Below, in pieces: positions 47,901 to 63,908 of a stretch of DNA of 64,000 bases. The DNA is from Fimbriosthenelais zetlandica (taxonomy: Eukaryota): NCBI GenBank assembly GCA_977030845.1, contig OZ365115.1, positions 18,972,001-19,036,000 of the forward strand, given 5' to 3'. The notes under the pieces are model-generated. The model was not told the origin of the DNA, did no database searches, and worked only from the letters and a program-made list of their open reading frames with translations. Position numbers and translations under genes: made by a program. Each line of letters starts with the position of its first letter. Within the stretch, counting starts at the first letter, position 1.

Positions 47901-50900
47901 AAGAATCTCAATGCGGTAAATCATAACTATAGAGACAAACTTCTGTTGTATGTTGAGGACGACAGACTCGATCAGGGATGGCTGGCGTAAGCTTTAGGGA
48001 TTTAGCTGGGAATTGTGCTGGCAATAGCCTTCTATGAGGCGGATCAAGTCAATGTCAGACGGATGGTAGTGGAGGCCCTATTATCTCAGCTACAATGGGT
48101 CGTCACTCACTACAAACAACACAGGAGGCTCGGGCCAGCTGCCTGATTTCAGGGCTCAGCGAGCTTTTATACTTTAATGCCATACAAAGTGGTTCTGACA
48201 GTTTGATTGTGTTGATACCACTTTGTATGATAAGGAGGTTTAAAGAGGACATTAGGAGTATAATTCCAGATGAGATTGGAGAGATTAAGTCAGCCAGCTC
48301 TTGGAGGCAAGAGTTTGATGAAGTGAGGGATAAAAAATGGCACTGGCAGAAAAATGAGGTCTGAGCATATTGTATGTGGCGTAACCTATAGGTAATTGTT
48401 GTTTCCATTATAGCTGAAGCAATTGCATGCCAGGCTTGGGTACTTTTTTATTCTGGGTAACGTCATATTTATGCTCAGGATAGGAATTGATGTACTTTGT
48501 TTTGGAGTATATATATAGATCGAAAAAGATATTCTCCGTTTTAACTGAAGATTCAAGAAACCTTTTTGGATTTCCTATATATATTCAAGTGGGAAGATCA
48601 AGTTACTGGCTGGAGACTCGGATGATTTCCTTTGAGCACGGCACGCTGTTGTCTGTGATTCCTTCTCTTGGGAAATTGGGAATGGAAAGGAAAGAGGTCG
48701 CCTTGACAAACCGGCTAGTAAATTGTCATGGTGATGTACCTGTCAATAAAAGAGTGTGAGACAATCAGAGCAATGGGCTGAGATAGGTCTAAATATTGGT
48801 GTGCCGGGGGTATTGGTCGCTGGCCAGTGTTAGCCTGGCTTGACAACTGATTAGATCAAACTGATTGTCCGGGCGAAAAGAACAGACAGATCAGACTTCA
48901 TCACTGATAAGGGACGGCTGGACAGTCACATGGACTGATAAAACAAATGGACAATTTGCTAGTAACAATACATTACTCTTGATTTTACTGTGCAGTCGGT
49001 TTGTCATTTGGGGGAAGTAATAATATATAGTTTCAGTCTTCTGAGTCTTCAATTGTTAAAATTGTTACCAAGAGTGTGAGCTGGTATTCACCCATAACAG
49101 GCTCTATAAAAATTCTAAAAAAAAAAAGAAAAAAGAATTTGATCCTTTTATTTCTTGTGAATATATTTTTGTTATCAGGATAAATGAAATTTTGATTATG
49201 GGTACGTGAATAACGACTTTATTCTTTATTAGCTAAGAGTACTTGTTTATAAGAAATTTAACAGGAAGGAATTAAAGAAACCTCATTTTAATAGAAGACC
49301 TAGAACAGAACAAGTTTGTTTATAAAAATACGCATTATTTGTTTGTCGGGGAAATGATCATTAAGTGGCATGATCGTAAGTCATGCCCTCTATCAAATCC
49401 AGAATGATTACTTTCTGATTCCAGCATCCTTCCTGCCCACTATTGAAGATAAATGTTATCAGAGGCCAGTGTTACTGAACATGTACCATCCTTGTCTCAT
49501 ACTCTCCATCCAAATGGAATTGACCAATCAGGAGACAAGCCTTGGTCATGTGACATAAGCTTGGCCTAATCGGAAGCATTTCTAGTTGTGAATTGCTGCT
49601 TGGCCACCACTTGAGCTTATGGTGTGGTCAGCCTGGTGGCCAAGTGTAATTAAGTTATAATTAAAAGCCAGTTGTAACAACTATCTAGTCTTTTCAGTCA
49701 TAAATAATACCTCGGAAAGCGATGTTGTTTGCTGCCTTCGGCCTCATACACTATGGAAATGATGTGGTGGCAACCTGTATGACATTGGCGGCCTGGTGTT
49801 TTGATAGATTCATATAATGTATGTGCTTTTAGATGTGGGCTAGTAATGGAATGGCACTGTTCTCTGCCTATCATGATGGCACTTTGTGGGCAACTGGGCC
49901 TGGTTGTAATGGACACTAAGTCCCTCTTAGAATTGGTGTATTTAGCATTGATGACCACTGATAACGATTGGTATTTGTTGCTGACTCCTGGCTCTGCAAA
50001 AAATGGTGGCCATCCCACTTAATAAAGCTGGCAGTGTTGTTATCTTTGATGGACACCATTACATGGTATATGCTAATGCAGTGGATTTGTCTGTTATCAT
50101 TGCGTATGTTGATTACTCGATCTTTGACCTAAGGGCGCTGATTGTTGCATATTTGTGGGAAAAGTTACAGGTTCTAATTACACGTTGGAGATTTTATTGG
50201 CATGCTCAGGTCTTTAGTTTACAGTCGGATTTGGCTTAACCTGATTTTGTGCTGAAGACTTTTTNNNNNNNNNNNNNNNNNNNNNNNNNNNNNNNNNNNN
50301 NNNNNNNNNNNNNNNNNNNNNNNNNNNNNNNNNNNNNNNNNNNNNNNNNNNNNNNNNNNNNNNNNNNNNNNNNNNNNNNNNNNNNNNNNNNNNNNNNNNN
50401 NNNNCGCTGCTAAGGCTATATTCATGTTTGATATATAGGCCTTATTTCATTGGATAGTATGTTGGTGTTGGATATCACAAAATATTGGGTTTTACAAAAT
50501 ATATTTATAACATAATTTACGTTTGTTTGGTGCGTGAATGATTTGTAGCTATCATGGTTCATTTTTTTCCTCTTTTCTCTTTTATTCAGTTTACTGACTT
50601 GCAAATAGAGACAGTGAAGAACCCTAAGCCCCTTCCTGACATGAACAAGCTGGCCTTTGGGGCAGAGTTCTCCGAACATATGTTTGAAGTCGACTGGACC
50701 GATGCAAATGGCTGGGGCACACCTGCAATCAAACCTATGACAGAATTCCACATACATCCGGCTGCTAAAGTATTCCATTATGCCGTTGAAGTAAGTATTC
50801 ATTGGATGATTCGGTCCATTATGCTTTATTTTCAGTAAAATCTGAAAGTATTTGGGCAAAATTATTATGTTTACATTAATCCGAAATCATAGAACTATTT

Positions 50901-53900
50901 TAGTATACATGTGTGTAACATTTCATAGAAATATATGAAAACGCATCAGGGATCCCATTTACTCTATTTAATTTGCCCATCCTTGACTATATTATATATC
51001 TATGATTTACCTAGCAGTTTATACTTTGGTTACATTATGATGCATTTCACTCAATACGTTTATATATATGGAAAATTCCTATCTGAAAAAATTCCGATAT
51101 GACTATACTTTAGACTTGTATGAAGGTCCTTTGAGGCGACAGTGCTGAGACCTAGTGTTCACAACAGGATTCATCCGAGTGTCATTTTCGCTTGAAAATA
51201 CTCCTACAGTTCTATGAAAATACTACCCTGATTCAGACACCAGTAGATCTATGTATACTATTGACAGTTGAATAATGTCTAAATCTGACCGTCACTAAAT
51301 TGGCGTCTCTCCCCATTTAATATTTTTTGTTATGCCCCAGCTGAGTTATGAATTGTTTTTTTTATTTCGGATCAAGTTTCTGCTTACTGATTTTATGCAG
51401 AATGATGTTTTATTAGTTTGCTCGTGTTTGATAGTTCATTGAGTTCACAGTTATCTTTTCCTTAGTTGTATGAAGGCCTCAAAGCTTATTATGGGGTTGA
51501 TGGAAAGATACGACTGTTCCGTCCGACATTGAATATGAAGCGGATGAAGATAACAGCGGAACGTGCAACTTTGCCATATGTGAGTCCCTGTCACCTTTAC
51601 CATGCCTGAAACTAAAAGTCAAGGCATGTGAATGTGACCTATGAAAGGACTGTTGCAGGGTATAATTTACCTGGTATCGCATCGCATTTTGCGACGCAAT
51701 TTGATGTATTTACGATATAAAATCAAATTGTCATCGCAATTTTTGCGATACATGTTTTCTGCATTCTTCAGGTGGTAAAAGAGAAATTGCGATGCAAAAT
51801 CGCTTGATTGGATTCTGACTGCTATGCAAAATTTTTTCAAACCAAAATTATACCCTGTATTTTACTACCACATATGTATATATGACGCTATGGCAGGGAC
51901 ACGGGCAAGACCGCTTAATATTGAATACCACCAAAGATAATATGAGAGCCATCTGACGAGCTTTGCCATGAATGTTTGCATGGCTAATGTATGGTTGAAG
52001 GATGCAATCCTGTCCATTATGCATGATTACAAAGTGGTTCTTTGGACATGCTTAATCTTTTCTGGCTCAAATGCTTCTCTGATCATTAATTTCCTACTTT
52101 TTGTAAAAGGTTGTATTCCCACGTCGAGGGAACTATACTTTTGCCAATACTAAAACTTTACTATACTAAAATTACAATAAGTTGACAAAAAAAACTTAAT
52201 GGTTGAGAGAAATCTGAAAGGAACACAATATGGTAAAGAGGACAATTTTCACGTGTCCATACGTGTGTATAGCTTGCATGATATCACTCCGCTAACGAGA
52301 AGCATGTCATTATGTTTTGCCAATTAAACTGTGCAATAATATGATTGCAACAGGAACGGTTTAATAAATGCTTCACTAATCCTAAGTTGTATTTCCAGAA
52401 GGATTTCTATACTATGAAAGAACTTCTACCAAGTCTACATCAGGAAGCCAATCCTACACCCAACTATCAGTCCGCTGAACGATTCATATATGGCCCAACG
52501 CTCAATTATTGAAAGCCAATTAATATTCTCTCTGCCCTTTGGTTCTCTTTTTCTCTCTTATGAACATAATAGCTATTTGAAGGGATGAAGGCCTACCATG
52601 GAGTGGATGGTGCTATCCGGCTTTTCCGTCCAGATCTCAACATGGTTCGCATGCGAAGCTCAGCTCAGCGTGCATCACTACCTGTGAGTTTTCATAGCAA
52701 ATAGGAAATGTACAAATAATCTAGTAGTGTGCGCATGTCATCTTTCTACTGGTGATACCCTTATTGTGTTCTATTAGATGTTATTTTTGTATTAGAGCCT
52801 GGTGTTGTTTTTTAGATGTTATGCTTGCAGCTTAGATGTTATTTCTTATTTGCTATAATTATGTTAGTTGTTTTTTAGATGTTATGTTTAGATGTTATTT
52901 TTTACTTGATGTAATTATGTTAGTTGAATTTATTTCGTTTATTATCATAAGAGTACAGTTTAATGTGCAGTTCTGCAAGCATTTCATACATTTCTGTTCT
53001 TACAATGCATTATTTTTATATCATTTTCAAAATAAAGTTGTTTTGAAAGTGATATAATGAAACCATATATTTGGATTGTCCCAAGTAAAGGAACAGATTC
53101 CGTTCTCTCGTCATTCTTGGAACATGAAACTATAAACTGTGATATTCTTCTGGAATTTCATCTTCAAATGTGCATATATATGGTGTCTTAATTTATTCAT
53201 AAGATTCCTTGTCTACACACCCACTTGCATTATTGCATGATTTGTTAAGTAGTCTATAGTATGTAGTTACTTAACTTATTGAACTTCTTGGTCGACTTCT
53301 GTCCGAGAAGTGGTATTGGAGGGGGTATGCCCCGAGAGTGAATGGGAGGTGGACCCGAGGGCTTTAGCCCGAGGGTTTCCCCCGTGCCATTCACCCGAGG
53401 TGCAGACAAGCACCAATACGACTTTGAGTTCAATTCTCTATTAATGCTATCCATTCCAAAATGTCATAGAAATTATAGGAATTACTTAAGTTGACATCAG
53501 AACCACGCAAATCAGAGAACAGAAAATTAGGGCAAAATGTATCAAGCAGGCAGGTGATATCATATGATGGTATCACCCACCTTAATCATATCAAGGCCCA
53601 ATTCTAATCTTATGGGCAACACATTTTAAGGAGATCACAAATAAGATGTTTCAACATATATGTCAATTACTCTTCATAATTTGAGCCTTTTGGCTTTATG
53701 TCCTACTCATGTAAATAATAGTCTGGCTTTATGTATATGATTCTTTGCAGGGTCTTGATTCCTTATAAATAATGCTGATTCTATTGTAAATTTTCTTTGA
53801 ATCTCGTCTTCTGTAGACTGTATAATATTTAGCCTATTCTATGTTTATTCAGTTTGGACCTGTTGAGGATAGTGTGTTCATCGGGTGGTGGGTGCTATGC

Positions 53901-56900
53901 TATGCATTAGATGGCTTCTCTACTACTATCATTTGATTGTATAAATATGTTCATCAGGAATTTTATTATAATTCGAAGAAATTATGATTGATTAAATGAA
54001 AAAGACCATTTAACTACTGACAATAGTATTGTTATAATAGAAAATAAAGTGAAAGTATCTCTAGGGTTCAAGATTTTCATAAATTAATGCTGCTGTTTCA
54101 CTGATGATTTCTGACTAATAATGATTAATAACTCTCCATCGTTTATTTCTATGCTTTAGGACTTTGATTCTACAGAGCTGATTAGCTGTATGAAGAAGTT
54201 GGTCAGTATTGACAAGCGGTTTGTACCCCAATCCACAGAAGCCTCTCTCTACATACGCCCCTGTTTAATAGGGACTGAGGTAAATATCTCTCAGATAACG
54301 TTATATATAAGCAAAGCCATATTAGTTTTCCTTCAATTTAGGGTTCCCAGCGACTCTGGAAAACCTGGAAAATGAGTTTCAATGTTTTCCTTACAGGGAA
54401 AAATCCGGGAATTTGAGGAAAACTAGAAAAATCAGGGGAAACTCGGGAATTTGAACACTAACTAAGAATGATAATCTTTCGGAGGTTGACGAGTACCATT
54501 CCATGCCCGCCACTTAAGTTTAGAGTGCTTCATATAACTAAAATATCTTCTGGAATTTAAGGGCTTACTCAGGGAAAACTCGGGGAATTCTGTTTTAATT
54601 ATGTAACACGTGATATAGAAAGGGAGTTGATGTGTTCGTCTTATTCAGAAGTACAAATACTTTGAGGATGTATTGATGATTCGTTGTATTTTTCCTGGTT
54701 TTCTGTGAATTCTTAAGAATACTTTATGATATATGATTAGGTGACGAGGGTTTAATCCTAGGGGTCCAAATTTAAAAAAATGTTCCTTCAGTACTATTTT
54801 ACCGCCGGTATAATGAAAAAAGAATTTAAAAATGTCTTTATATATGTTGGTTATATGGATTCCTATATATGTTGCAGCCAACTCTAGGTGTGACAAAAAC
54901 CAATGACGCCAAATTATTCATTATTACCGGGCCTGTGGGGCCATACTACCCTACTGGTTTCAAACCCGTTACTCTTCTTGCTGACCCTCAATATGTCCGA
55001 GCATTTGAGGGAGGATGTGGACGTTACAAAATGGGCGCGTAAGTAATAAAATATTTAGATCGACTGCATGGATTCAAATTTCACAAATAAAAATAGCAAT
55101 GATGAATAAAAATGAGTTTATTAAAAGACAAATGAAAAAAAGCTACCGTATTTGCCGGTGTATATGCCGCACCTTTTTACCCTAGAAATGACCCAAATCG
55201 CGGCCTGCGGCTTATACAACGGTGCCGTTTATATTATGCATTTTTCTCCCTTCGGTCTAAGTTTGGTGGATGACTAAAAATGAGTTTGTTAAATGACAAA
55301 TGGAAAAATACCGGTACACGTTCGGAACCTTACTGTAGGCCTATTTATGAAATTGGGTTTAATTCGTGAGAGTTTTTTTTTTCAGAAACTATGCCCCCAC
55401 AATCTACATTCAGATTGAAGCACTTAAGAAGCACAACTGCCAGCAGGTGCTTTGGTTGTACGGCCCTGATCAGAAAATTACTGAGGTGGGAACCATGAAC
55501 TTCTTCATGTACTGGAAAAATGAACGAGGAGGTATGTACTATGTAGATTCCTTGATAGATCTGTCTCAGTTTGTCAGCGACTCTGACAATCAGGGAAAAC
55601 CAGGAAAATGAGTTTCACTTTTTTCAGACAGGGAAAACTCAGGGAATTTGAGAAAAACTGGAAAAATCAGGGAAAACACAGGCAAACTTCAACACTGACT
55701 CAGAACGGTAATCTTTCGGAGGTTGACTTATACAATCGCATGCCCGCCACTGAAGTTCAGAGTGCTTCATTAGATTAAAATATCTCCTGGAATTTAAGGG
55801 TTTACTCAGGGAAAAATCAGGGAATTCTGTTTTCATGAACTGCTGGGAACCCTGATAGATTTTTCTCAGTTCATGGTTAATTTATAATGTGACTTTGTAA
55901 AATGATCTAATCACCGAAATTTGTTGACCTATCCAGAGAAGGAATTAGTCACTCCTCCCCTTGACTCGGGAACTATTCTCCCAGGAATTACGCGAAGAAG
56001 TCTACTAGACATGGCCAGAGAATGGGTAGGCCCTTAAAGTTTAAATTTTATCCATTATTTTCATCTCATTATTAATTGTCAAAGAGAAGACTACATTGCT
56101 GTTTCACTGAATCCGCTTTTATATTTTCAGAACGACTTTAAAGTGTCAGAACGTGAGATAACCATGGCAGAATTAATACAAGGCGTTCAGGAAAAGAGAG
56201 TGAGTAATCGTTGACTCTCGAAATTCTGGTTAATTCTAGTTAATACCTTTTCTTGATTGTCATCAATTACTGCTTGAAACAGCTAAAAATTGAGTCATAT
56301 CACAGAGTTCCCAGTGACTCTGGAAATTAGGGAAAACCTGGAAAATTAGCTTCACCTTTTCCAGACAGGGAAAACTCAGGAAATTTGAGAAAAACTGAAA
56401 AAAAAATACTCGGGGCATTTCAACGCTGACTCAGAAGGATAATCTTTTGGAGGTTGACCCGAACAATCCCATGCCCGCCACTGAAGTTTAGAGGGCTTCA
56501 TATCACTATAATATCTCCTGGTATTTAAGGGCTTACTCAGGGAATTCTGTTTTCATGAACTTCTGGGAAGCCTGTATTATATATTTTCGTACTTTTCTAG
56601 GTACTCGAGCTATTCGGTGCTGGCACAGCTTGCGTTGTTTCCGCCATTGAAAAGATTATCTACCAAGGCAAGCCAGTACACATACCCACCATGGAGGAGG
56701 GTGCTCCTCTCACCAACCGATTCCTCAAGGAACTCACCGACATTCAGGTAAAGTGTTATCACTTGTCAAGACACGCCTACATCTCTGTTATTTTGGGGGA
56801 AGTGGGAAAAACACTAGTATCACTACAGGGTTCCCAGCGACTCTAGAAATCAAGAAAAACCTGGAAAATGATTTTCACTTTTTCCAGACAGGGAAAACTC

Positions 56901-57274
56901 AGGGAATTTGAGAAAAACTGAAAACAAAATCAGGGAAAACTCAGGGAATTTCAATACTGACTCAAATGGATTGACGCGTACAAGGACTAAAATATCTCCT
57001 TGTTGAATTTAAGGGAAATCTCAAGGAATTCTGTTTTCGTGAACTGCTGGGAACCCTGCTGTGACAAATATTCTATATTTTTTAACCAAATGTATTTCAG
57101 GATAAATAATTCCATTTTTCTTCTTATAAAACCCTAAATGATATCAATAAAAAATGTCCTAAAACTAAAAAAAATGATTTCTTTCCGTTAATGTACATTT
57201 TAGGAATCTCAATGATTTTGTTTTTCTTCCAGTATGGACGCAAGCCCAGCCCCTGGGTGGTGACCGTGGAATAA
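35931..57274 (+). CDS. BCAT: Branched-chain amino-acid aminotransferase (fold type IV PLP enzyme), 11 coding exons with duplicated exon 4; 402 aa (4b) or 403 aa (4a)
   Basis: Exons 35931-35951, 41045-41146, 50590-50790, [51466-51579 or 52573-52683], 54160-54279, 54878-55038, 55386-55531, 55937-56025, 56131-56199, 56601-56747, 57233-57274. All GT-AG with consistent phases. Motifs HYAVE-LFEG-KAY, SLYIRP, YKMGANY (PLP lysine), [26 protein letters not shown]. Confidence 0.97.
37606..37905. mobile_element. MITE in BCAT intron 1 (second family member at about 40196-40420)
   Basis: Termini caaggttccc / gggaacctg; direct repeat atatg at 37601-37605 and 37906-37910; internal sequence shared with 40196-40420. 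Confidence 0.7.
39731..40788. mobile_element. Non-autonomous Tc1/mariner (pogo/Tigger-like) element with a nested MITE
   Basis: 24-bp TIR cagtcagacctcgt(t/g)aatccggac, TA duplication (39729-39730, 40789-40790), subterminal atccgga repeats, no transposase ORF. Confidence 0.8.
41045..41146 (+). CDS. BCAT: BCAT exon 2 (mitochondrial presequence-like, [34 protein letters not shown])
   Basis: Strong acceptor ttttctttttcag, donor AAG|GTAAGA; Arg/Ser-rich, no acidic residues, ends in FK like other BCATs. Confidence 0.9.
41174..41436. repeat. Interspersed repeat, copy A (inverted partner at 47449-47707)
   Basis: About 260 bp alignable by eye to the reverse complement of 47449-47707 (e.g. gtagagcgagcccagaca / tgtctgggctcgctctac). 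Confidence 0.8.
41476..41852. mobile_element. MITE with CAGGGTT...AACCCT termini
   Basis: cagggttcg ... cgaaccct ends and internal cctggaaa repeats, similar in style to the 54-57 kb family. Confidence 0.55.
42318..42514. mobile_element. MITE, copy A (inverted partner at 51656-51857)
   Basis: Termini cagggtttaatt / aattataccttg; interior is the reverse complement of 51656-51857. Confidence 0.75.
43979..44153. mobile_element. Degenerate TA-CCGTATT-type Tc1/pogo MITE (relative at about 55146-55315)
   Basis: Left end taccgtatttaccggcgtattta with a decayed inverted copy near 44135-44155; similar start at 55144. Confidence 0.45.
47449..47707. repeat. Interspersed repeat, copy B (inverted relative to 41174-41436)
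   Basis: See copy A. Confidence 0.8.
50265..50404. other. Assembly gap (140 N) in BCAT intron 2
   Basis: Run of N. Confidence 1.
50590..50790 (+). CDS. BCAT: BCAT exon 3
   Basis: FTDLQIETV...[10 protein letters not shown]...[11 protein letters not shown]; 201 nt, phase 0-0. Confidence 0.97.
51466..51579 (+). CDS. BCAT: BCAT exon 4a ([38 protein letters not shown])
   Basis: Acceptor ttatcttttccttag, donor TAT|GTGAGT, 114 nt, no stops, phase 0-0. Confidence 0.9.
51656..51857. mobile_element. MITE, copy B, between exons 4a and 4b
   Basis: Termini cagggtataatt / aattataccctg; inverted copy of 42318-42514. Confidence 0.8.
52573..52683 (+). CDS. BCAT: BCAT exon 4b ([37 protein letters not shown])
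   Basis: Long pyrimidine tract then ataatag acceptor, donor CCT|GTGAGT, 111 nt, no stops, phase 0-0. Confidence 0.92.
54160..54279 (+). CDS. BCAT: BCAT exon 5
   Basis: [10 protein letters not shown]...[13 protein letters not shown]; 120 nt. Confidence 0.97.
54878..55038 (+). CDS. BCAT: BCAT exon 6 (contains the PLP lysine, YKMG)
   Basis: PTLGVTK...GPVGPYY...[15 protein letters not shown]; 161 nt, phase 0-2. Confidence 0.97.
55386..55531 (+). CDS. BCAT: BCAT exon 7
   Basis: NYAPT...QQVLWLYG...EVGTMNFF; 146 nt, phase 2-1. Confidence 0.97.
55937..56025 (+). CDS. BCAT: BCAT exon 8
   Basis: [28 protein letters not shown]; 89 nt, phase 1-0. Confidence 0.97.
56131..56199 (+). CDS. BCAT: BCAT exon 9
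   Basis: [23 protein letters not shown]; 69 nt. Confidence 0.96.
56601..56747 (+). CDS. BCAT: BCAT exon 10
   Basis: [16 protein letters not shown]...IPTMEEG...LTDIQ; 147 nt. Confidence 0.97.
57233..57274 (+). CDS. BCAT: BCAT exon 11 (terminal)
   Basis: [13 protein letters not shown] after the acceptor tttttcttccag. Confidence 0.95.
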   Translation, partial: YGRKPSPWVVTVE

Positions 57275-61038: not shown

Positions 61039-62863
<1,825 letters not shown>

Positions 62864-63194: not shown

Positions 63195-63318
63195 ATGTCT
63201 AGACGTTCAGGATCAGGGAAACTATTTATTGGCCGATTAAGCAAACGAGCCAATAGCAGAGATCTGGAGGAAGTATTTGAACATTATGGCAGACTTGCTA
63301 GATGCGATATAAAGTATG
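63195..63318 (+). CDS. Serine/arginine-rich splicing factor-like RRM protein, exon 1 (gene continues beyond the window)
   Basis: CAAG ATG; MSRRSGSGKLFIGRLSKRANSRDLEEVFEHYGRLARCDIKY with RNP2-like LFIGRL; donor G|GTAAGT. Exact subfamily not assignable. Confidence 0.85.
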
Positions 63319-63908
63319 GTAAGTGGCGATCGTCTCGTTAATTTAGAGATTTTCGTACTCCCGTCAGGCCGAGCTCCCTCCTCCTGCCACCACCCACTTT
63401 GCCTTTGGCAGCCATCTTGGACTTGGCCTAGATCAGTAGATGAGGGACAGAAAAAATTATGGCCCTATCATGTCCGCTAAAACAAGAATACGGGGGTCAT
63501 TATCGCTTATTATTACATGTGGAAATGTGTTTCCTTTACAGTAAATTTAACATTAGAGACTCTTAGACTTAGTCTAGTCTCCAGTCCAGAGTTTAATGTG
63601 TTATTGTTAACACCCCCCGCCATCGGGGCCAGACTACTGTCTGACTAGCCTCTAGGCCCTAGTAAGGCCTGGATCTATGACTACTGATTTTTAAATCATG
63701 TACATGGGCCTTGTCAACTCTAAGTTAGTGTTGACAATAATTGTTTTATTGTGTCGTTAAAATTAAATGTTTTAGTGGCAAAAGTTTAGTTTGACAATTC
63801 CAGTTATAGTTATAGTATACGATACTTATAGTTATATTATACGGTACCTGGTACGTAGATCTATTAAAGTTAAGGACTGTTTTAAAATGTGTTTTTTTGT
63901 GCTTGCAG

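What the first reader, a model, noticed from the sequence alone, without database searches (positions are those of the whole stretch)
51466..51480. Exon 4a puts Tyr at the canonical Phe of the substrate pocket: a splice-controlled specificity switch?
Seen: YAVE-LYEGLK (4a) versus YAVE-LFEGMK (4b). Known: this is the fold-IV specificity motif YxxxxFEGxK/R (Y70, F75, G77, K79 in human BCAT2; Y31, F36, G38, R40 in E. coli IlvE). F75 lines the branched-chain side-chain pocket, whereas D-amino-acid transaminases and (R)-amine transaminases carry Tyr there. The exon also contains the PLP-phosphate-binding Arg (R99 equivalent, NMxRM), kept in both. Exon 4a adds one residue (LPY) at the junction. Inference: the 4a isoform has altered substrate range or kinetics while remaining catalytically competent.
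Basis: partly seen in the sequence, partly recalled or inferred. Interest (0 to 1): 0.75.

Follow-up and report, generated by a model that had tools for sequence, protein, structure and literature searches.

The report
Tyr-for-Phe alternative exon in worm BCAT
The only branched-chain aminotransferase gene of this (probably annelid) animal has two tandem copies of one exon; one copy puts tyrosine where nearly all such enzymes have phenylalanine beside the cofactor, and that tyrosine is kept in every related worm copy found, but whether it changes the enzyme is untested.

Summary
51466-51480 reads TTG TAT GAA GGC CTC (LYEGL) at the start of a 114-nt exon, 4a (51466-51579). A 111-nt twin, 4b (52573-52683), reads LFEGM. 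Both have AG/GT splice sites and phase 0, and both align to human BCAT residues 74-110. So the Tyr sits at Phe75, and Glu76, Gly77, Lys79 and Arg99 are kept in both.

- **Real, selected exon:** a Y-type copy is present in seven other genomic or protein fragments, including the annelid Paralvinella palmiformis, where it also precedes an F-type twin. All eight have Tyr, form one clade (95/93 support), and show dN 0.04-0.3 with saturated synonymous sites.
- **Restricted range:** Capitella, Lamellibrachia, Owenia, Helobdella, Lineus and Lingula have one F-type exon.
- **Rarity:** Phe stands at 121 of 122 motifs in the 125 proteins of the two searches, which had returned animal BCATs closest to the query; the one Tyr is Paralvinella's 4a.
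- **Other determinants:** all other BCAT residues checked are intact, so a D-amino-acid or (R)-amine switch is unlikely.
- **Not shown:** no RNA run was listed, so alternative and mutually exclusive use is inferred. The effect of the Tyr is unmeasured.

The scan noted the exon pair on this window before (s1-184600).

The parts
50590..50790 (+). BCAT exon 3 (constitutive). It ends ...[12 protein letters not shown] and carries the Tyr70 equivalent.
   Evidence: Acceptor and donor sites and translation. Aligns to human BCAT residues 8-72. Single copy in the genome.
51466..51579 (+). Exon 4a, 114 nt, phase 0: [38 protein letters not shown]. It has Tyr at the Phe75 position and one extra C-terminal residue.
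   Evidence: Orthologous Y-type exons in other species.
51469..51471 (+). TAT codon, the Tyr replacing Phe75 (E. coli F36) on the betaX strand.
   Evidence: The codon is TAT or TAC in all six Y-type exons for which DNA was available, while neighbouring synonymous sites vary.
52573..52683 (+). Exon 4b, 111 nt, phase 0: [37 protein letters not shown]. This is the canonical Phe form.
54160..54279 (+). Exon 5 (DFDSTEL...[12 protein letters not shown]). It carries the Tyr141 and Arg143 equivalents.
54878..55038 (+). Exon 6. It carries the O-pocket loop Leu153 and Val155 and the catalytic Lys202 equivalents.
55386..55531 (+). Exon 7. It carries the Tyr207, Glu237 and Thr240 equivalents.
55937..56025 (+). 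Exon 8 ([30 protein letters not shown]).
56131..56199 (+). Exon 9 ([23 protein letters not shown]).
56601..56747 (+). Exon 10. It carries the beta-turn Gly312-Thr313-Ala314-Cys315. The second Cys of the mammalian CXXC motif is Ser here.
57233..57274 (+). Last coding exon ([13 protein letters not shown] plus stop).

Best explanation
Exons 4a and 4b are an old tandem duplication inside the animal's only BCAT gene. Most likely they are used one at a time, giving two isozymes that differ in residues 74-110 (the end of the betaX strand through the PLP-phosphate Arg99 helix).

The 4a form keeps every catalytic and L-amino-acid-orienting residue. It replaces the betaX-strand Phe (hBCATm F75, E. coli F36) with Tyr. 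That Phe lines the side-chain (O) pocket and, with Tyr207, flanks the PLP phenolic oxygen. The 4a enzyme therefore has two tyrosines at the PLP O3' / O-pocket floor: the alpha-helix Tyr typical of BCATs plus the betaX Tyr typical of DAAT and R-TA.

The likeliest outcome is an L-specific BCAT with a more polar, slightly smaller O-pocket and a changed cofactor environment. That would show as shifted Km/kcat among Leu, Ile, Val and Glu/2-oxoglutarate, or a shifted pH profile.

**Shown:** exon anatomy, homology, single origin, an invariant Tyr, purifying selection, and intact BCAT determinants.
**Inferred:** mutually exclusive splicing, catalytic competence, and any kinetic effect.
For: - **Anatomy and homology:**
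- **One gene, two exon copies:**
- **Orthologous Y-type exons:**
  - L001: 34/37 aa identical, 79% nt identity, introns unalignable.
  - Paralvinella palmiformis: a Y exon followed by an F exon in the same order.
  - L011: the Y exon lies directly after exon 3. L012 and L013 also carry a Y exon.
  - Protein fragments P0007 and P0009.
- **Tyr invariant:** 8 of 8 exons; the codon is TAT or TAC while neighbouring synonymous sites vary.
- **Selection:** dN is 0.04-0.30 with synonymous sites saturated.
- **Single origin:** the Y exons form one clade, 95/93 support.
- **Outgroups:** the six annelid, nemertean and brachiopod loci checked each have a single F exon.
- **Rarity:** Phe in 121/122 and 28/28 of the motifs checked.
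- **Other BCAT residues conserved:** Y70, G77, K79, R99, Y141, R143, L153, V155, K202, Y207, E237, T240, G312-T313-A314.
- **Role of the position:** side-chain pocket of hBCATm (PMC6957111). Subfamily-specific position coupled with the PLP-coordinating Tyr (PMC8320979). In DAAT the Tyr at this place contacts PLP O3' through water and helps bind the carboxylate (PMC8401098).
Against: - No RNA evidence. No sequencing run was listed for this genome, so read laying could not be used.
- No full-length spliced protein with E|LYEGLK from this clade turned up. Two degenerate junction scans of metagenome contigs gave nothing relevant.
- Both exons are multiples of 3, so the reading frame does not enforce exclusivity. 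The only annotated model (Paralvinella P0165) strings both together.
- Phe-to-Tyr is conservative. Tyr occurs in other eukaryotic BCAT-like fragments (P0006, P0082, P0097, P0046), so the kinetic effect may be small.
- In the bacterial BCAT-like TaTT, every variant carrying F39Y lost activity. It was tested only in combination with other changes. Full competence of 4a is therefore not guaranteed.
Confidence: 0.6

Rival explanations
1. The exon switch is real, but the Tyr tunes the cofactor or the protein rather than the substrate range. Examples: PLP O3' protonation, pH or temperature optimum, stability, dimer contacts, or regulation. Other 4a-specific residues (Leu78, Thr at exon position 30, the extra C-terminal Tyr) would matter as much as Tyr75.
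For: The position is listed under 'PLP coordination of the phenyl group' together with Y164. In DAAT the equivalent Tyr reaches PLP O3' through water. Leu at exon position 5 and Thr at position 30 are also invariant in all eight Y-type exons. Exon 4 also encodes Arg99 and about 30 non-pocket residues that differ between the copies.
Against: Phe75 is explicitly part of the hydrophobic side-chain pocket. A hydroxyl there should be felt by the substrate. The two readings do not exclude each other.
Confidence: 0.2
2. The 4a isoform is catalytically weak or inactive. It would act as a regulatory or heterodimer partner, or in a non-transaminase role.
For: Every TaTT variant containing F39Y lost detectable activity. 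[quoted passage not shown]
Against: F39Y was never tested alone. Exon 4a keeps Glu76, Gly77, Lys79, Arg99 and the other BCAT-invariant positions under strong purifying selection in eight lineages. That pattern is what an active site in use would show. Natural BCAT-like sequences with YEG exist.
Confidence: 0.08
3. The 4a isoform has acquired D-amino-acid or (R)-amine transaminase activity. This is the strong form of the reader's analogy.
For: Tyr at this betaX position is the DAAT and R-TA state.
Against: The other determinants are BCAT-type: Gly77 (not Val), Lys79, Y141/R143 and the GTA turn that hold the alpha-carboxylate in the P-pocket, and an O-pocket loop with Leu153/Val155 and no Arg/His carboxylate trap. 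Grafting R-TA residues onto a BCAT scaffold, F39Y among them, destroyed rather than created activity.
Confidence: 0.03
4. Both exons are always spliced in together, as in the Paralvinella gene model, or 4a is an unused relic.
For: 114 + 111 nt stays in frame. P0165 contains both copies in series. There is no RNA evidence either way.
Against: A 37-residue tandem repeat of the betaX strand through the Arg99 segment could place only one copy in the active site, yet both copies keep all active-site residues in two distant species. A relic would not keep an open frame, intact splice sites and dN far below dS across species whose introns no longer align.
Confidence: 0.05

Closest known systems
Human BCATm/BCATc (BCAT2/BCAT1; PDB 1EKF, 2ABJ) and E. 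coli IlvE
   Same: Same fold-type-IV BCAT. Exon-by-exon alignment covers residues 8-353. Y70, G77, K79, R99, Y141, R143, L153, V155, K202, Y207, E237, T240 and the G312-T313-A314 turn are all conserved. Exon 4b has the canonical Phe75.
   Different: Exon 4a has Tyr at Phe75. Vertebrates get two isozymes from two genes; here a single gene carries two copies of one exon. The second Cys of the mammalian redox CXXC motif is Ser.
Bacillus D-amino-acid transaminase (Tyr31) and Aspergillus (R)-amine transaminase (Tyr58)
   Same: Tyr at the same betaX-strand position next to the PLP phenolic oxygen.
   Different: Those enzymes pair the Tyr with Val at the Gly77 position, an Arg/His carboxylate trap or Arg126, and (in R-TA) Trp instead of the alpha-helix Tyr. 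None of these is present here.
Thermobaculum terrenum TaTT F39Y variants (PMC8320979)
   Same: The only experimental Phe-to-Tyr change at this position in a BCAT-type scaffold that I found.
   Different: It was engineered, always combined with other substitutions, and inactive. 4a is a natural, selected Tyr in an otherwise canonical animal BCAT.
Tandem mutually exclusive exon pairs elsewhere in this genome, noted earlier in this scan (TCF, AP-2, nAChR, Vsx)
   Same: Same architecture: two adjacent homologous exons of equal phase, both under selection, in a probably annelid genome.
   Different: Here the pair sits in a metabolic enzyme and swaps a subfamily-specific active-site residue.

Membership tests
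Branched-chain aminotransferase (PLP fold type IV, Pfam PF01063) | Overall homology to solved BCATs along the whole protein | tested here: met
   Exons 3, 4a/4b, 5, 6, 7 and 10 each hit human BCAT1/2 chains (E 1e-9 to 8e-17) in collinear order. The closest full-length relatives (63-67% identity) carry PF01063. Single exons alone stay below Pfam's cut-off.
Branched-chain aminotransferase (PLP fold type IV, Pfam PF01063) | BetaX motif Y-x4-F-E-G-x-K/R (Y70, F75, G77, K79) | tested here: inconclusive
   Fully met with exon 4b (YAVELFEGMK). With exon 4a, Y70, E76, G77 and K79 are met but F75 is Tyr.
Branched-chain aminotransferase (PLP fold type IV, Pfam PF01063) | Catalytic Lys202, PLP contacts Arg99, Tyr207, Glu237, Thr240, and the alpha-carboxylate site Tyr141/Arg143 with the G312-T313-A314 turn | tested here: met
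   All are present at the aligned positions.
D-amino-acid transaminase | Carboxylate trap Tyr31 + Arg98* + His100* in the O-pocket loop, with Val and Lys in the betaX motif | tested here: not met
   Only the Tyr is present. The O-pocket loop is BCAT-type (PTLGV, Leu153/Val155) and Gly77 is kept. Feature definition from PMC8401098.
(R)-selective amine transaminase | His/Arg53, Tyr58 and Val60 with no Arg40 equivalent; Trp183 in place of the alpha-helix Tyr; Arg126* | tested here: not met
   Tyr only. Gly77, Lys79 and Tyr207 are kept. Feature list from PMC8320979, Table 2.
Mutually exclusive tandem exon pair | Adjacent homologous exons of the same phase and near-equal length, each with its own splice sites, both conserved | tested here: met
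   114 and 111 nt, phase 0, AG/GT sites, 26/37 aa identical. Conserved in Paralvinella in the same order.
Mutually exclusive tandem exon pair | Exactly one of the two exons in each mature mRNA | not testable with these tools
   No sequencing run was listed for this genome. No spliced 4a transcript was found in the protein or metagenome searches.

The most novel reading that the evidence does not exclude
By choosing exon 4a, one gene makes a BCAT with a 'hybrid' active-site floor: the alpha-helix Tyr that marks BCATs plus the betaX Tyr that marks DAAT and R-TA. This isoform would have a truly different substrate or reaction profile, for example a preference for polar or acidic side chains, or changed handling of keto acids. 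That would make it a natural, splice-controlled specificity switch at a subfamily-determining position, kept since the common ancestor of this worm and Paralvinella.
Probability: 0.2. Interest if true: 0.7.

Novelty: new variant of a known kind. Interest (0 to 1): 0.45.

Why it matters
The betaX-strand Phe/Tyr position is one of the few residues used to sort fold-type-IV transaminases into BCAT, DAAT and (R)-amine classes. Engineering it has mostly destroyed activity. Here nature has kept a Tyr at that place in an otherwise canonical animal BCAT, in an exon that can be swapped for the Phe form within a single gene.

If the two isoforms differ, they give a ready-made matched pair for learning what this residue does. 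They would also show that some annelids diversify branched-chain amino-acid metabolism by exon choice, where vertebrates use two genes. If they do not differ, the case shows that the 'specificity motif' tolerates Tyr in BCATs.

Tried and rejected
- **RNA evidence.** Two sequencing-run searches listed no run: exon 4a alone and the whole gene. Three earlier attempts hit a busy server. Read laying therefore could not be used.
- **Spliced 4a transcripts.** A region-restricted protein search on Paralvinella's 4a segment returned only F-type proteins, and only 30 candidates. Two degenerate scans of metagenome contigs for an exon 3|4a junction gave nothing, or unrelated chance hits such as a transposase.
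- **Profile built from separate exons aligned to a nematode BCAT (A1).** It was badly aligned and gave only 12 hits. It served only to obtain protein ids.
- **RNA pairing that might control 4a.** Intron 3 holds an 11-nt copy and a 9-nt reverse complement of the start of 4a, and these pair in the MFE fold. However, 83 of 300 shuffles do as well, the fold z-score is +0.74, and the related species has no counterpart. I treat it as chance. The inverted-repeat scan of the introns gave only AT-rich weak pairs.
- **N-terminal exons.** They could not be found by homology.
- **Taxon of the other YEG-bearing fragments.** It could not be determined.
- **Structure model of the spliced isoform.** I did not fold it. 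It has no reference id and I did not type it in.
- **Pfam on single exons.** All stayed below the cut-off, as expected for pieces.

Full report
**What is there.** The + strand of the window from 50590 to 57274 carries a typical animal branched-chain aminotransferase (BCAT) gene. I rebuilt exons 3 to 11 from splice sites and reading frames. Each of the six exons tested aligns collinearly to solved human BCAT1/BCAT2 chains.
- Exon 3 ends ...FHYAVE|gtaagt at 50790.
- Two exon-like segments follow. Exon 4a is 51466-51579: 114 nt, ttttccttag|TTGTAT...CCATAT|gtgagt, peptide [38 protein letters not shown].
- Exon 4b is 52573-52683: 111 nt, peptide [37 protein letters not shown].
- Both are phase 0 and join cleanly to exon 5 (DFDSTEL...).
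- The finding's 15 bases are TTG TAT GAA GGC CTC = LYEGL.

**Residue assignment.** Both exons align without gaps to residues 74-110 of human BCATm in 1EKF numbering.
- Exon residue 2 is Phe75 (Tyr in 4a). Residues 3, 4 and 6 are Glu76, Gly77 and Lys79. Residue 26 (NMxRM) is Arg99.
- The constitutive exons supply the rest of the active site: Tyr70, Tyr141 and Arg143, Leu153, Val155 and Lys202, Tyr207, Glu237 and Thr240, and the Gly312-Thr313-Ala314 turn.
- Apart from Phe75, the 4a isoform is therefore a complete BCAT.

**Is 4a a real, used exon?** RNA could not be consulted, because no sequencing run was listed for this genome. The evolutionary evidence is strong.

Searching 1.84 billion representative proteins with the 4a peptide found several open frames in genomic contigs that begin ...Q|LYEGLK and end ...LP(Y)|VS. 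These are Y-type exons with their intron flanks.
- The closest, P0003/L001, shares 34/37 residues with 4a but only 79% of its bases. Nothing outside the exon aligns.
- The annelid Paralvinella palmiformis has a Y-type exon ([14 protein letters not shown]...) followed about 1.4 kb later by an F-type exon (AFEGMKAYRGPDKK...). That is the same order as here. Its annotated protein strings both together.
- In L011 the Y-type exon lies 145 nt after exon 3. L012 and L013 add two more species. P0007 and P0009 add two more peptides.

Across these copies:
- All eight Y-type exons have Tyr. In the six exons for which DNA was available the codon is TAT in five and TAC in one, while the neighbouring Leu and Gly codons vary freely.
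- Between copies, dN is 0.04-0.30 while synonymous sites are saturated.
- In a tree of 24 exon-4 peptides the eight Y-type exons form one clade with 95/93 support. With 37 columns this is indicative, not proof.

Capitella, Lamellibrachia, Owenia, Helobdella, the nemertean Lineus and the brachiopod Lingula each have a single F-type exon across the whole gene span. The duplication and the Phe-to-Tyr change thus arose once, in a sub-lineage of annelids that includes Paralvinella and this animal, and the Tyr has been held since.

The genome has only one BCAT gene and only these two copies of the exon.

**Is Tyr unusual?** Yes, among the BCAT proteins these searches returned.
- I checked the 125 proteins of the two searches. 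One search's 120 listed hits were the closest to the Paralvinella enzyme and were mainly animal. They held 122 motifs. Of these, 121 have Phe; the one Tyr is Paralvinella's own 4a.
- A second set of 28 full-length proteins, 24 of them eukaryotic and four bacterial, has 28 Phe.
- In the search seeded with 4a itself, and therefore biased towards Tyr, 15 of 137 motif-bearing representatives have Tyr. Six of the 15 are the genomic Y-type exons of this clade (P0003, P0007, P0009, P0017, P0025, P0037). The other nine are P0046 (QLYEGLK, most similar to fish BCATs) and eight YEGMK fragments of unknown organisms (HYAQELYEGMK, HYAQEIYEGMK, HYAPELYEGMK), some clearly from spliced or intron-free sequence.

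Tyr is therefore rare, but it is not incompatible with a BCAT scaffold.

**What the residue does, from the literature.**
- Phe75 is listed among the residues forming the hydrophobic side-chain pocket of hBCATm (PMC6957111).
- In the fold-IV comparison of PMC8320979, E. coli F36, A. fumigatus R-TA Y58 and TaTT F39 are one subfamily-specific position on the O-pocket floor. The position is also listed, with Y164/W183/Y166, as coordinating the PLP phenolic group. The authors call the Tyr-Phe couple essential.
- In Bacillus DAAT the Tyr at this betaX position (Y31) belongs to the carboxylate trap and reaches the PLP phenolic oxygen through water. A Phe there is described as the BCAT state (PMC8401098).

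The only experimental Phe-to-Tyr change I found in a BCAT-type scaffold (TaTT F39Y) was always combined with other mutations, and every such variant was inactive. The position is sensitive.

**Most likely mechanism.** One gene makes two isozymes by choosing 4a or 4b.
- I infer exclusivity because both copies keep all active-site residues in distant species. That would be pointless if both were always present, since only one betaX strand can sit in the active site.
- The 4a enzyme stays an L-specific BCAT, because the alpha-carboxylate site and the BCAT-type O-pocket loop are unchanged.
- It has a hydroxyl added on the O-pocket floor next to PLP O3' and Tyr207.
- I expect shifted kinetics or preference among its usual substrates and/or a changed cofactor environment.
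- A move to D-amino acids or (R)-amines is very unlikely, because the other determinants of those classes are absent.
- Leu78 and a Thr at exon position 30 are also invariant in the Y-type exons and may contribute.

**What remains open.**
- Whether 4a is used, where and when.
- Whether the two exons are strictly exclusive. Both lengths are multiples of three, so the reading frame does not enforce it.
- Whether the Tyr has any measurable effect.
- I found no convincing RNA structure that could enforce the choice.

**Verdict.** This is a selectively maintained variant of a well-known enzyme, made by a tandem exon pair whose use one at a time is inferred, not shown. I found no description of it: a single full-text search found no paper pairing mutually exclusive exons with BCAT. 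It is of moderate interest until expression and enzymology are done.

Noticed in passing
window 51116-51137 (intron 3): An exact 11-nt copy of the first 11 nt of exon 4a (TTGTATGAAGG), followed two bases later by CTTTGAGGC, the reverse complement of exon 4a nt 11-19. They pair in the predicted fold, but the match is at chance level by shuffling and has no counterpart in the related species L001.
   Followed up: yes
L004 4460-4570 and 5999-6109 (Paralvinella palmiformis, GCA_025642065.1): The public gene model LSH36_275g09029 (P0165) includes both exon-4 copies in series, giving a 37-residue internal repeat. This is probably an annotation artefact of an alternative exon pair. Its F-type copy is the more divergent one (AFEGMK, NARRL instead of NMxRM).
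   Followed up: partly
window 56601-56747 (exon 10): The mammalian redox-sensing CXXC motif (Cys315/Cys318) reads C-V-V-S here, so only the first Cys is present.
   Followed up: no
window about 54391-54513, 55590-55685, 56263-56418, 56850-56954: A short repeated element lies in several BCAT introns. In the ORF list it shows up as similar peptides (…FPEFSL…, …GKPGK…) on both strands. It is probably a small interspersed repeat.
   Followed up: no
window 61250-62311 (- strand) and 63195-63341 (+ strand): Downstream neighbours: exons of an ARF/ARL-like small GTPase ([13 protein letters not shown]..., ...VVFANKQD...) on the minus strand, and the start of an RRM-type RNA-binding protein (KLFIGRLSKRANSRDLEEVFEHYG) on the plus strand.
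   Followed up: no
window about 50264-50405: A run of N in the intron upstream of exon 3. The exons upstream of exon 3 could not be located by homology.
   Followed up: no
proteins P0006, P0008, P0042, P0050, P0056, P0051, P0082, P0097, P0046: Other eukaryotic BCAT-like fragments of unknown origin carry Tyr at the same position (HYAQELYEGMK, HYAQEIYEGMK, HYAPELYEGMK, QYAIQLYEGLK). In at least two of them the intron lies five codons upstream of the annelid position, which points to independent lineages.
   Followed up: partly
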